Origin: Octopus sinensis | Lineage: Eukaryota | Assembly (NCBI RefSeq): GCF_006345805.1 | Contig: NC_043013.1 | Location: forward strand, 4,898,001-4,962,000 | Direction of reading: 5' to 3' | Length of the DNA: 64,000 bases | Notes under the pieces: generated by a model | Told to the model about the DNA's origin: nothing | Seen by the model: the letters and a program-made list of their open reading frames with translations, nothing else | Databases searched by the model: none | Shown: positions 13,675 through 15,447 of the stretch, in pieces | How positions within the stretch are numbered: the stretch's first letter is position 1 | How the letters are laid out: the number at the start of each line of letters is the position of its first letter | Translations under genes and position numbers: made by a program

Positions 13675-15447
13675 TCATAATAAAAAAATATTATAATTAG
13701 AATTGTTTTTTGAATCGCATTCCCTTGCACTAGGCTCAGGCACACCATCGCTTGTAGATGCAATTGCCGACTCACAAACATCTGCTGATTTCTTTTTGAT
13801 AAACAATTCTAAAGTTGCTTGCTTAGCTTTTTTCTTTTGCTCTCTATAAATTTCTCGGTAACACGCAGAAGCATTTGTTATGGTTGTAGAAACTCTTGCA
13901 CTTCGTTCGAAATTTGGATCTTGTGCTTGAAAAATTTCCAAGGCTTTATCCAAATGTTGAAACGCTTCCTTGAGTCCTTTAAATGTGAATGCATTAACTG
14001 GCGCTTCTTCAACAGTGTCCTTCTCTTCTATCGTTTCCTGTTCTTGCATTGCAATAAGGTCTTCGTTGGTGAGTTCATCACTATGTGATTGAAGCAGCTC
14101 ATCAATATCGCTTGCCGACACATTGAAATTTAATTCATTTGCCAGTTTTACAATTTCTTCTATCTCTTTTTCTACATTTTCTTGTAGTGATTCAAAACCC
14201 TCAAAATCATTAAGAAATTGAGGGCAAAGTTTTTTCCAAATGCCCTTCATATTCTTTTGACTGATATTATCCCAAGCTTTACCTATGATTTTCACTGCAG
14301 TGTAAATATTGTGACTCTTCCAGAATTCCATTAGAGTCGGTCCACCTTCTTTGACCGTTTCTTCGTTCAACATTGCAAATGTGAGACATAAATAATGGGC
14401 CTTAAAAGCTGCAATAACTCCCTGGTCCATTGGTTGCAAAAGTGGGGTCGTATTTGGAGGCAAAAAAATAACTTTGACATTAGGATGAAGATGTTTCAGA
14501 ATTGGAGGGTGGCTTGGTGCATTGCCAATAAGTAACATTGCATGAAATGGAAGTTCGTTCTTATCGCAATATTCCTTAACTTCTGGCACAAAGTGATATG
14601 AAAACCATTCTTCAAATAATGTTGCTGTAACCCAAGCTTTTTTATTAGATTTCCATATAACTGGAAGGGTACTTTTTAAGATGCCTTTAAGTGCCCTAGG
14701 GTTTTCCGCTCGATAAACTAGCATTGGTTTCAATTTCAAATCTCCTGATGCATTTCCTCCAAATAATAACGTCACTCGATCTTTTGCAACTTTAAAACCA
14801 GGCCGCGCAGATTCTTCCTTCGCTATGTAACTTCTGGAAGGCATACGTTTCCAGAAAAGTCCGGTTTCATCGACATTAAAGATTAGTTGTGGCATGTAAC
14901 CCCCTTCTTTAATCATTTCTGCCAATGTTTCTGGGAATTTTTCTGCTGCGTCGACATCAGCGCTTAACACTCCTCCTTGCACTTTGATGGAATGCCACCT
15001 GTGGCGATTTTTAAATCGCTCAAACCATCCTCTGCTCGCGACAAAAGTTTCGTTTGTGTCACCTTTCATTTCTTTAAGCATACTGAAAAGAGACAAAGCT
15101 TTGCTACGAATCGCCGCTCGGTTGACATTCAAATGCATGCGTTGAGTCGTGTCACCTATCCATACATTTAAAAGTTTTTCCATTTCCGGAATAATGCTTC
15201 CAGAATCTCTTTTACGAGACCACGTTGAGTACAGAAGCTGCGCATTTCTCACTTGAGATAAATATTTTTGTTTTTCTTTGAGAATTGTGCAGACAGTTGA
15301 CGAATTAAGTGAAAATTTGTCACTAATGTTCTTCACAGTTGTACCACCATCGTGCATTTTTACAATTTCATACTTCGTTTCCAAAGTGATCGCTTTTCGC
15401 TTCTTTTTCTTCCCGTCAGTGTCCGTTGTACACTTTCGTTTAAGCAT
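13675..15447 (-). CDS. Tigger1/TIGD1-like pogo-family transposase-derived protein, 590 aa, intronless, nested antisense in ATIC intron 6
   Basis: NLS-like KKKKRK; CENP-B-type HTH (RKAITLETKYEIV); Tc5-type HTH (EMEKLLNVWI...ASRGWFERFK); DDE_1 domain (FNVDETGLFWK, KDRVTLL, LIGNAPSHP, QPMDQGVI). Colinear with human TIGD1 as recalled. Confidence 0.93.
   Translation of the reverse strand: MLKRKCTTDTDGKKKKRKAITLETKYEIVKMHDGGTTVKNISDKFSLNSSTVCTILKEKQKYLSQVRNAQLLYSTWSRKRDSGSIIPEMEKLLNVWIGDTTQRMHLNVNRAAIRSKALSLFSMLKEMKGDTNETFVASRGWFERFKNRHRWHSIKVQGGVLSADVDAAEKFPETLAEMIKEGGYMPQLIFNVDETGLFWKRMPSRSYIAKEESARPGFKVAKDRVTLLFGGNASGDLKLKPMLVYRAENPRALKGILKSTLPVIWKSNKKAWVTATLFEEWFSYHFVPEVKEYCDKNELPFHAMLLIGNAPSHPPILKHLHPNVKVIFLPPNTTPLLQPMDQGVIAAFKAHYLCLTFAMLNEETVKEGGPTLMEFWKSHNIYTAVKIIGKAWDNISQKNMKGIWKKLCPQFLNDFEGFESLQENVEKEIEEIVKLANELNFNVSASDIDELLQSHSDELTNEDLIAMQEQETIEEKDTVEEAPVNAFTFKGLKEAFQHLDKALEIFQAQDPNFERSARVSTTITNASACYREIYREQKKKAKQATLELFIKKKSADVCESAIASTSDGVPEPSARECDSKNNSNYNIFLL

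What the first reader, a model, noticed from the sequence alone, without database searches (positions are those of the whole stretch)
13675..15447. Intact but catalytically altered Tigger/TIGD1-like gene nested antisense inside ATIC
Seen: a 1773-bp uninterrupted ORF in a window where every other transposon ORF is broken. The triad is D(ETG)...G(NAPSHP)-32 aa-D(QG). The second Asp of the DD32D motif is GGC, one transition away from GAC (plus-strand base 14525). The DNA-binding HTH domains and NLS are intact. No CAG-type TIR pair was found: there is only a one-sided TA|CAG at 15997-16001 and no partner in about 700 bp past the stop. ATTAAA-type signals lie on the - strand at 13452 and 13481. Known: pogo/Tigger transposases have been domesticated repeatedly (CENP-B, JRK, TIGD1-7), often losing catalytic residues. 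Inference: an independent cephalopod domestication as a DNA-binding protein, or a young dead copy.
Basis: partly seen in the sequence, partly recalled or inferred. Interest (0 to 1): 0.75.

Follow-up and report, generated by a model that had tools for sequence, protein, structure and literature searches.

The report
Domesticated Tigger transposase gene in octopus
An old "jumping gene" lodged backwards inside an intron of the octopus ATIC gene has lost a catalytic residue, yet three Octopus species have kept its protein under selection as strict as that on ATIC itself, so it is most likely an unannotated host gene born from a transposon, a well-known kind of event.

Summary
Window 13675-15447 (-) is an intact 590-codon pogo/Tigger transposase ORF with the triad D193 / G308 (GGC) / D341. 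It lies antisense in the 6.6-kb intron between ATIC exons at 12862-12942 and 19523-19594. The window is Octopus sinensis.

The same ORF sits in the same intron and orientation in O. vulgaris, where it is intact with 6 aa differences. It is also there in O. bimaculoides, open on both sides of an assembly gap. All three species share G308.

Selection on the ORF:
- dN/dS is 0.12 (O. sinensis vs O. bimaculoides) and 0.08 (vs O. vulgaris), the same as ATIC itself (0.13, 0.08).
- Differences by codon position are 24/17/70.
- There are no indels in the ORF against 27 in 2.1 kb of flanks.
- A paralogue elsewhere in the O. sinensis genome is frameshifted and has lost two catalytic Asp.

So "young dead copy" is rejected and "domesticated" is supported.

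They delimit a 2694-bp element carrying a 400-bp MITE-like insertion.

Expression and function are untested. This is a new member of a known kind.

The parts
13459..16152 (-). Whole Tigger-derived element. It is 2694 bp, or about 2286 bp without the later insertion and its duplication.
   Evidence: It is delimited by the 5' TIR and the degenerate 3' TIR. The size matches intact relatives of 2320 bp (L005) and 2240 bp (L006).
16137..16152 (-). 5' terminal inverted repeat CAGTAATACCTCACTT.
   Evidence: Exact match to the probe. It is 16/16 identical to the TIR of the intact relative L005. It is conserved in O. vulgaris and O. bimaculoides. The flanking dinucleotide is TA in O. bimaculoides and CA in O. 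sinensis.
16083..16136 (-). Subterminal region with repeated (T)TTACGAG motifs.
   Evidence: Read from the sequence. It is shared in part with paralogue L001. It is part of a 71-nt run identical between O. sinensis and O. bimaculoides.
15534..15933 (-). A 400-bp MITE-like insertion in the 5' leader, rich in TTAACG/GTTAAC motifs. It is flanked by a duplicated TTATAAGC (15526-15533 and 15934-15941).
   Evidence: The paralogue L001 reads straight through the uninterrupted site. All three species carry the insertion. There is an internal inverted repeat at 15551-15569 / 15808-15826.
15448..15533 (-). Proximal 5' leader shared with the paralogue. It contains a conserved TTTATATTG (TATA-like) motif about 55-60 bp upstream of the ATG.
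   Evidence: DNA homology with L001 runs to window 15535. Alignment. A promoter role is inference.
13675..15447 (-). Intact ORF of 590 aa plus stop: the transposase-derived protein.
   Evidence: It is 100% identical in L002. dN/dS is 0.12 and 0.08. The AF2 model has pLDDT 85.
15253..15408 (-). First helix-turn-helix (CENP-B_N / psq type, aa 14-65). It is preceded by the basic KRK...KKKKRK stretch (aa 3-18), a putative NLS.
   Evidence: Pfam, the 1HLV match and helices 22-68 in the model. The NLS is inferred from the sequence pattern only.
14998..15189 (-). Second DNA-binding domain, HTH_Tnp_Tc5 (aa 87-150).
   Evidence: Pfam 46.3 bits against a cutoff of 22.2. The comparable N-terminal codons (1-129) have dN/dS 0.05.
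14236..14784 (-). DDE_1 RNase-H-like catalytic domain (Pfam aa 222-404). The fold starts at strand beta-1, aa 189.
   Evidence: Pfam 142 bits. Foldseek hits Mos1 3HOT and SETMAR 3F2K.
14869..14871 (-). First catalytic Asp, D193 (kept).
   Evidence: In the model it lies on beta-1. Its state in O. bimaculoides is unknown because of the assembly gap.
14524..14526 (-). Second catalytic position, G308 (GGC) in place of Asp.
   Evidence: The same Gly is present in O. vulgaris and O. bimaculoides. The position is Asp in 111/120 relatives. In the model it sits just after beta-4.
14425..14427 (-). Third catalytic Asp, D341 (kept).
13457..13471 (-). Decayed 3' TIR TGACGCATTAGTG (13471-13459; 10/13 to the family TIR) followed by the TA target-site dinucleotide (13458-13457).
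   Evidence: Position and strand are as expected, 204-216 bp after the stop against 253-285 bp in intact relatives. It is further decayed in O. bimaculoides.
12862..12942 (+). ATIC exon (aa 134-160) bounding the host intron on the left.
   Evidence: tblastn with O. sinensis ATIC P0121, 100% identity.
19523..19594 (+). ATIC exon (aa 161-184) bounding the host intron on the right.

Best explanation
This is a Tigger (pogo-superfamily) DNA transposon that inserted antisense into ATIC intron 6. The insertion happened before O. bimaculoides split from the O. vulgaris/O. sinensis lineage, about 34 Mya according to PMC10700109.

The copy became immobile. Its second catalytic Asp is Gly in all three species, and its 3' TIR has decayed. 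The host has since maintained its single-exon ORF as a gene, that is, a domesticated transposase.

Shown: fixed orthologous position, shared D308G, strong protein-level purifying selection, an intact predicted transposase fold, and decay of a paralogue.

Inferred: the protein is imported into the nucleus through its N-terminal basic stretch. It acts through its two N-terminal helix-turn-helix domains as a sequence-specific DNA-binding protein, in the manner of CENP-B, JRK and the TIGD proteins. The RNase-H-like domain and the helical C-terminus would then serve as a non-catalytic scaffold or interaction module. Transcription presumably starts from the element's own 5' leader, which now carries a MITE-like insertion.
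For: - Orthology. The ORF lies between the same two ATIC exons, on the same strand, in O. sinensis (window and L002), O. vulgaris (L004 16429-18201) and O. bimaculoides (L003 12159-14091). The flanking intron aligns continuously across the ORF borders.
- Selection. NG86 dN/dS is 0.122 for O. sinensis vs O. bimaculoides (522 codons, dN 0.032, dS 0.264; differences by codon position 24/17/70, chi-square p = 2e-10). It is 0.076 vs O. vulgaris.
- Benchmark. Host ATIC gives 0.134 and 0.079.
- Neutral simulation. 111 neutral substitutions leave no stop in only 0.8% of 20,000 trials and never give 37 or fewer aa changes.
- Indels. There are 0 indel events in 1570 aligned ORF nt against 27 in 2070 nt of flanks (Poisson p = 1e-9).
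- The ATG and the stop position are conserved.
- Gradient of constraint. dN/dS is 0.05 for the DNA-binding N-terminus, 0.09 for the DDE region and 0.21 for the C-terminus.
- G308 is shared by all three species.
- Contrast. The O. sinensis paralogue L001 (83% nt identity) has a 1-nt frameshift, a premature stop, D193S and D308N.
- Family conservation. 87 of 91 family-conserved columns are retained.
- Fold. The AF2 model has pLDDT 85, and its closest folds are Mos1, SETMAR and CENP-B.
- The values match those that Gao et al. 2020 (PMC7386202) report for accepted vertebrate pogo domestications: TIGD2 0.09, JRKL 0.06, JRK 0.21.
Against: - There is no evidence of transcription or protein.
- None of the three genome annotations calls a gene here.
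- The O. bimaculoides copy has an assembly gap over aa 130-197, so its full intactness and its D193 are unknown.
- Only three congeneric species could be examined.
- The 5' TIR is still perfect and two of the three catalytic Asp remain, so the protein looks very transposase-like.
- Genome-wide copy number could not be measured.
Confidence: 0.82

Rival explanations
1. A young, recently inserted dead copy. The ORF is intact only because there has not been time for it to decay, and G308 is a single recent hit.
For: The ORF is intact and retains 87 of 91 family-conserved positions. The 5' TIR is perfect.
Against: The copy is at the same intronic site in three species whose deepest split is about 34 Mya (PMC10700109). 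G308 is shared by all three. 111 substitutions have accumulated between O. sinensis and O. bimaculoides, concentrated at third codon positions. A MITE-like insertion shared by all three species lies in its leader.
Confidence: 0.02
2. An old copy drifting neutrally that has stayed open by luck.
For: Overall nucleotide identity of the ORF (92.9%) is about the same as that of the flanking intron (92.0-92.5%).
Against: The codon-position skew is 24/17/70 and dN/dS is 0.12. The simulated chance of no stop is 0.008, of 37 or fewer aa changes is below 1/20,000, and of no indel is 1e-9. The paralogue shows what neutral decay looks like.
Confidence: 0.02
3. The protein is selected for a transposon-related role rather than a host-gene role. 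For example, it might bind Tigger-family ends and repress or guide mobilisation of related elements or MITEs. Alternatively it might keep some residual nuclease or recombinase activity with a D-G-D site.
For: The protein is nearly unchanged relative to active relatives. Its own 5' TIR and subterminal repeats are identical over 71 nt between species. Relatives with TIRs exist in the genome (L001). D193 and D341 are kept.
Against: The 71-nt run is not statistically exceptional given about 200 run starts at 8% divergence. No close or active family members were detected in the protein collection. Loss of the second carboxylate should abolish metal-dependent catalysis in RNase-H-fold transposases (established knowledge, not tested here).
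Confidence: 0.12
4. The conservation reflects a non-coding function on either strand, such as an ATIC intronic enhancer or splicing element, or an antisense RNA, rather than a protein.
For: The location is inside an essential housekeeping gene. No gene is annotated here.
Against: The constraint has three-base periodicity in the minus-strand frame. Synonymous sites evolve at least as fast as ATIC's (dS 0.26 vs 0.19), and start and stop are kept. A non-coding element would not spare third positions.
Confidence: 0.02

Closest known systems
Vertebrate Tigger/pogo-derived genes (TIGD2-7, JRK, JRKL, CENP-B, POGK, POGZ; Gao et al. 2020, PMC7386202)
   Same: - Same domain layout: CENP-B_N plus HTH_Tnp_Tc5 plus DDE_1.
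- A stationary copy at an orthologous locus.
- Ka/Ks well below 1 (0.08-0.12 here; 0.06-0.21 there).
- A catalytic triad altered in some members (TIGD2 is DD34S, JRKL is DD34D/N).
   Different: - Independent origin. The nearest relatives are an Octopus pseudogene paralogue and TIR-bearing transposons of other animals at 56-59% identity, whereas gorilla TIGD1 (P0115) is 44-45% identical.
- It is the second Asp that is lost, not the third.
- One perfect TIR is still attached.
- Shown only within one genus, about 34 My deep.
- Expression is unknown.
Active Tigger transposons (e.g. the elements in L005 and L006; Tigger1/2 of mammals)
   Same: - The same TIR sequence (CAGTAATACCTCACTT).
- TA target-site duplication.
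- About 2.3 kb in size.
- A single ORF of about 590 aa.
- 87/91 conserved positions.
   Different: - D308G.
- Decayed 3' TIR.
- Fixed at one locus in three species.
- Under host-level purifying selection.
- A MITE-like insertion in the leader.
Octopus 'TE-derived transcription factors' of Mukherjee & Moroz 2023 (PMC10027918)
   Same: That paper proposes pogo/CENP-B and HTH-Psq domestication in the Octopus lineage. It lists the paralogue-lineage protein XP_014781176 (P0001) as an HTH-PSQ factor.
   Different: The list is based on annotated proteins and on species-specific clustering in trees. The locus described here is not annotated in any of the three genomes. It is supported here by synteny and dN/dS, while the listed protein's O. 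sinensis counterpart (L001) is a broken pseudogene.
SETMAR / Metnase (primate mariner-derived gene)
   Same: An ITm-superfamily transposase fold (Foldseek hit 3F2K, TMt 0.67), kept by the host with an altered catalytic triad and retained TIR-binding ability.
   Different: SETMAR is fused to a SET domain through splicing and belongs to mariner, not pogo. No fusion partner is evident here.

Membership tests
pogo/Tigger transposase (protein family) | DDE_1 (RNase-H-like) domain | tested here: met
   Pfam PF03184, 142 bits against a cutoff of 22. Structural matches to Mos1 and SETMAR.
pogo/Tigger transposase (protein family) | Bipartite CENP-B-type N-terminal DNA-binding region (CENP-B_N/psq HTH plus HTH_Tnp_Tc5) | tested here: met
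   HTH_Tnp_Tc5 scores 46.3 bits (cutoff 22.2). CENP-B_N scores 20.6 bits, just under its 21.2 cutoff. However, the CENP-B DBD 1HLV aligns over aa 16-149 by sequence (E = 1.2e-5) and by fold.
pogo/Tigger transposase (protein family) | Complete DDxD catalytic triad (Tigger DD29-36D) | tested here: not met
   The triad is D193 / G308 / D341. The spacing of 32 fits the family, but the second Asp is Gly.
Tigger transposon (mobile element) | Short CAG-initiated TIRs at both ends, flanked by a TA duplication | tested here: inconclusive
   The 5' TIR is perfect, with TA in O. bimaculoides and CA in O. sinensis. The 3' TIR matches only 10/13 but has the right place and strand and is followed by TA.
Tigger transposon (mobile element) | Mobility: multiple near-identical copies and insertion polymorphism between species | tested here: not met
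   The position is the same in three species. The only close relatives found are 81% identical. A whole-genome copy count was not possible.
Domesticated (exapted) transposase gene, criteria of Gao et al. 2020 | Stationary orthologous locus across species | tested here: met
   The same ATIC intron and strand in O. sinensis, O. vulgaris and O. bimaculoides.
Domesticated (exapted) transposase gene, criteria of Gao et al. 2020 | Ka/Ks significantly below 1 between orthologues, with the ORF intact | tested here: met
   dN/dS is 0.12 and 0.08, equal to host ATIC. Caveat: the assembly gap in O. bimaculoides.
Domesticated (exapted) transposase gene, criteria of Gao et al. 2020 | Expressed, with a host function | not testable with these tools
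   No transcriptome or proteome data were accessible. The gene is not called in three annotations.
Orthologue of vertebrate TIGD1 | Shared ancestry by descent with TIGD1 (phylogeny and synteny) | not tested
   No formal tree was built. Identity to gorilla TIGD1 (P0115) is only 44-45%, below that to TIR-bearing transposons of other phyla (56-59%). 'TIGD1-like' is therefore an annotation label, not orthology.

The most novel reading that the evidence does not exclude
This is an Octopus-lineage (possibly octopod-wide) regulatory DNA-binding protein. It would have been recruited from a Tigger transposase at least about 34 Mya and been missed by all current annotations. It would recognise Tigger-type ends, including its own perfectly preserved 5' TIR and subterminal repeats inside ATIC. 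It could thereby wire scattered Tigger or MITE remnants, and perhaps ATIC itself, into a lineage-specific regulatory network.
Probability: 0.2. Interest if true: 0.65.

Novelty: new member of a known kind. Interest (0 to 1): 0.45.

Why it matters
Domestication of pogo/Tigger transposases is well documented in vertebrates, fission yeast and flies. For molluscs it has mostly been asserted from annotated protein lists. This locus meets the standard criteria: a fixed orthologous site, Ka/Ks of about 0.1, a shared catalytic lesion and a decaying paralogue as internal control. It is nevertheless absent from three Octopus gene sets. It therefore adds a well-supported cephalopod case and flags a blind spot, namely repeat-masked, intron-nested, single-exon genes. 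It also gives a tractable candidate for asking what such proteins do in cephalopods. It does not change the concept.

Tried and rejected
- An exact-protein look-up of the window ORF and of P0001 found no record. This gave no direct handle on transcripts or extra copies.
- A de novo TIR scan requiring at least 13/16 complementary bases between the two flanks found nothing above shuffled controls. The repeat finder also gave only chance pairs. The TIRs were found only after taking the TIR sequence from intact relatives.
- The 80-nt 'inverted repeat' at 12177-12256 / 16467-16544 was rejected as element ends. That sequence is a SINE-like repeat with up to 8 other overlapping matches in the window, and it also occurs in L001.
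- I first took the homology limits with paralogue L001 (13593 and 15535) for the element ends. Each copy in fact carries its own later insertion, and homology resumes at the TIR.
- I first read the 92% ATIC identity as meaning another species. It was an artefact of my approximate exon joins. The window is O. sinensis, and L002 is identical.
- A third protein search with the N-terminal 217 aa, meant to find short close fragments or transcripts, returned nothing above 60% identity.
- Selection on the 5' TIR itself was considered because of the 71-nt identical run. It was rejected as unproven, since such a run is expected about 0.5 times by chance in these flanks.
- A Pfam scan of ten of the other twelve long ORFs in the window gave no hits.
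Full report
**1. The observation**

The window holds an uninterrupted 590-codon ORF on the minus strand at 13675-15447.
- Pfam finds DDE_1 (E = 1.7e-41), HTH_Tnp_Tc5 (4e-12) and, just below its cutoff, CENP-B_N.
- The only solved structure matched by sequence is the CENP-B DNA-binding domain 1HLV, over residues 16-149.
- The catalytic positions are D193 (NVDETG), G308 (LLIGNAPSHP; codon GGC, + strand 14524-14526) and D341 (QPMDQG), with 32 residues between the last two.
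- In an alignment of the 120 best relatives, position 308 is Asp in 111. The octopus protein keeps 87 of the 91 columns that are at least 90% conserved.
- An AlphaFold model built on 67 sequences is confident (pLDDT 85, pTM 0.72). It places D193 on strand beta-1, G308 just after beta-4 and D341 at the start of the following helix, which is the canonical RNase-H-fold layout.
- Foldseek returns Mos1 mariner transposase, the SETMAR transposase domain and CENP-B.

**2. Where it is**

- tblastn with ATIC places ATIC exons on the + strand from 6327 to 32240.
- The ORF lies antisense in the 6.6-kb intron between the exon for aa 134-160 (12862-12942) and the exon for aa 161-184 (19523-19594).
- The locus fetched for O. 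sinensis ATIC (L002; GCA_006345805.1, CM016875.1) is the window itself, offset by 2579 bases. It encodes the identical 590-aa protein. The window is therefore Octopus sinensis.
- No gene is called on the minus strand of this intron in the O. sinensis, O. bimaculoides or O. vulgaris annotations. The protein is not in the protein collection.

**3. The decisive comparison**

The ATIC loci of O. bimaculoides (L003) and O. vulgaris (L004) could be fetched. Both carry the same element in the same intron and on the same strand. The flanking intron aligns continuously across the ORF borders.
- The O. vulgaris ORF is intact: 590 aa with 6 differences.
- The O. bimaculoides copy is open on both sides of a run of Ns that hides aa 130-197.
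- All three species have Gly at position 308. The lesion therefore predates their common ancestor, about 34 Mya for O. bimaculoides against the other two according to PMC10700109.

| Comparison | Tigger ORF dN/dS | dN | dS | Differences by codon position | ATIC dN/dS |
|---|---|---|---|---|---|
| O. sinensis vs O. bimaculoides (522 codons) | 0.12 | 0.032 | 0.264 | 24/17/70 | 0.134 |
| O. sinensis vs O. vulgaris | 0.076 | 0.0043 | 0.057 | 5/2/19 | 0.079 |

(Tigger values; ATIC values, measured the same way.)

- Constraint is strongest on the DNA-binding N-terminus (0.05), then the DDE region (0.09), then the C-terminus (0.21).
- The ORF has no indel in 1570 comparable nucleotides. The flanks have 27 indel events in 2070 nt (Poisson p = 1e-9).
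- In 20,000 neutral simulations of 111 substitutions, the frame stayed open 0.8% of the time. The number of amino-acid changes was never as low as the observed 37.
- The ATG and the position of the stop (TGA in O. sinensis, TAA in O. bimaculoides) are conserved.
- Overall nucleotide identity of the ORF (92.9%) is no higher than that of the intron (92.0-92.5%). The signal is therefore specifically a protein-coding one: third positions are free and first and second positions are held.

**4. An internal control**

The closest relatives in the protein collection are only 81% identical: P0001 of O. bimaculoides and P0005 of O. sinensis.
- P0005's locus (L001, another O. sinensis chromosome) is a paralogous copy with 83% nucleotide identity.
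- It has a 1-nt deletion near codon 119, a premature stop, D193S and D308N.
- The same family, in the same genome, decays where it is not protected.

**5. Ends of the element**

The nearest non-octopus relatives (56-59% identity) are complete transposons:

| Locus | TIR | Flanking bases | Element size |
|---|---|---|---|
| L005 | CAGTAATACCTCACTT | TA | 2320 bp |
| L006 | CAGTCATACCTCA | TA | 2240 bp |

Using that TIR as a probe gives these results.
- There is one exact hit in the 64-kb window, at 16152-16140 on the minus strand. It extends to 16/16 identity with L005.
- There is a 10/13 inverted partner at 13471-13459, immediately followed by TA. It lies 204-216 bp after the stop, where relatives have theirs.
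- The 5' flank is TA in O. bimaculoides and CA in O. sinensis.
- The paralogue L001 also starts with TA|CAGTAATACTTCG.

The element thus spans 13459-16152 (2694 bp).
- Its 5' leader is long because of a 400-bp MITE-like insertion at 15534-15933, flanked by a duplicated TTATAAGC.
- The paralogue lacks this insertion and all three species share it.
- Without the insertion the element is about 2286 bp, as in intact relatives.
- The two ATTAAA hexamers exist at 13486-13481 and 13457-13452, but both are disrupted in O. bimaculoides. They are therefore weak candidates for the poly(A) signal.

**6. Interpretation**

Shown:
- An old Tigger insertion fixed in ATIC intron 6.
- An insertion that is catalytically crippled and has one decayed end.
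- A protein that has been under purifying selection as strong as that on ATIC for the whole time separating three Octopus species.

Inferred:
- The protein works as a nuclear, sequence-specific DNA-binding protein. This rests on the N-terminal basic stretch, on two HTH domains that are the most constrained part, and on analogy with CENP-B, JRK and the TIGD proteins.
- It is transcribed from the element's own leader.

The rivals (young dead copy, lucky neutral survivor, non-coding constraint) are each contradicted by the data above. A transposon-related role, such as binding or repressing related elements, remains possible. The first 71 nt of the element (TIR plus TTTACGAG repeats) are identical between O. 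sinensis and O. bimaculoides, the longest such run outside the ORF. A run of that length is not improbable by chance in these flanks.

**7. Comparison with what is known**

- Gao et al. 2020 (PMC7386202) define domesticated pogo genes by a stationary locus, continuous phylogenetic distribution and Ka/Ks below 1. They report 0.09 for TIGD2, 0.06 for JRKL and 0.21 for JRK, with altered triads in some. This locus meets the tested criteria within Octopus.
- Mukherjee & Moroz 2023 (PMC10027918) proposed pogo domestication in the Octopus lineage from annotated proteins. Their tables include XP_014781176 (P0001), a member of the paralogue lineage.
- Full-text searches found no paper that combines Tigger, octopus and domestication.
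- The 'TIGD1-like' label reflects annotation transfer, not orthology. Identity to gorilla TIGD1 (P0115) is 44-45%, below that to TIR-bearing transposons of other phyla.

**8. Verdict and limits**

This is a real, probably functional, unannotated transposase-derived gene. It is a new member of a known kind and of moderate interest.

Limits:
- There are no expression data.
- An assembly gap hides 68 codons in O. bimaculoides.
- Only one genus was sampled.
- No genome-wide copy count was possible.

Noticed in passing
window 15534-15933 (duplicated TTATAAGC at 15526-15533 and 15934-15941): A 400-bp MITE-like insertion in the 5' leader of the Tigger element. It has imperfect terminal inverted repeats (AAAGGTGGACACCG / CGGTGCCCCAGTTT), an internal inverted repeat (15551-15569 / 15808-15826) and many TTAACG / GTTAAC / TAACGG motifs. 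It is shared by three Octopus species, absent from the paralogue, and has no other copy in the window. The 8-bp duplication suggests a hAT-type element. It sits where the gene's promoter should be.
   Followed up: partly
L001 9538-11455 (O. sinensis CM016879.1), with a 5' TIR at L001 8953-8965: A paralogous Tigger copy annotated by NCBI as the 407-aa 'tigger transposable element-derived protein 1-like' (XP_029648908.1). It is a pseudogene: frameshift near codon 119, premature stop, D193S and D308N. Its 3' part is interrupted by a SINE. The related O. bimaculoides protein XP_014781176 is listed as a TE-derived transcription factor in PMC10027918.
   Followed up: partly
window 62507-64000: A tandem array of a 22-bp unit (AGGGAGATCTCTAGACATTTCC), about 68 copies at 93% matches, running off the end of the window. 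It is a mini-satellite of unknown extent.
   Followed up: no
window 49148-49985: A long, degenerate (AC)n microsatellite. It explains the strong negative GC skew (-0.40) of the 48-50 kb bin.
   Followed up: yes
window 12177-12256 and 16467-16544; also 17459-17875, 18584-18781 and many other sites: SINE-like interspersed repeats, present in up to 16 overlapping copies within the 64-kb window and also in the other O. sinensis locus. One inverted pair brackets the Tigger region and could be mistaken for long TIRs.
   Followed up: partly
Tigger ORF and ATIC exons against intron 6 flanks (window 12943-17040): Synonymous divergence between O. sinensis and O. bimaculoides (dS 0.19-0.26) is about three times the substitution divergence of the alignable intron (about 0.08). 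Either alignable octopus intron sequence is itself constrained or biased towards slow sites, or synonymous sites mutate faster (composition or CpG). This is unexplained.
   Followed up: no
L003 about 13341-13704 (O. bimaculoides GCA_001194135.2, CM046617.1): An assembly gap (run of Ns, about 364 nt where about 203 nt are expected) falls inside the orthologous ORF. It hides codons 130-197, including the first catalytic Asp.
   Followed up: no
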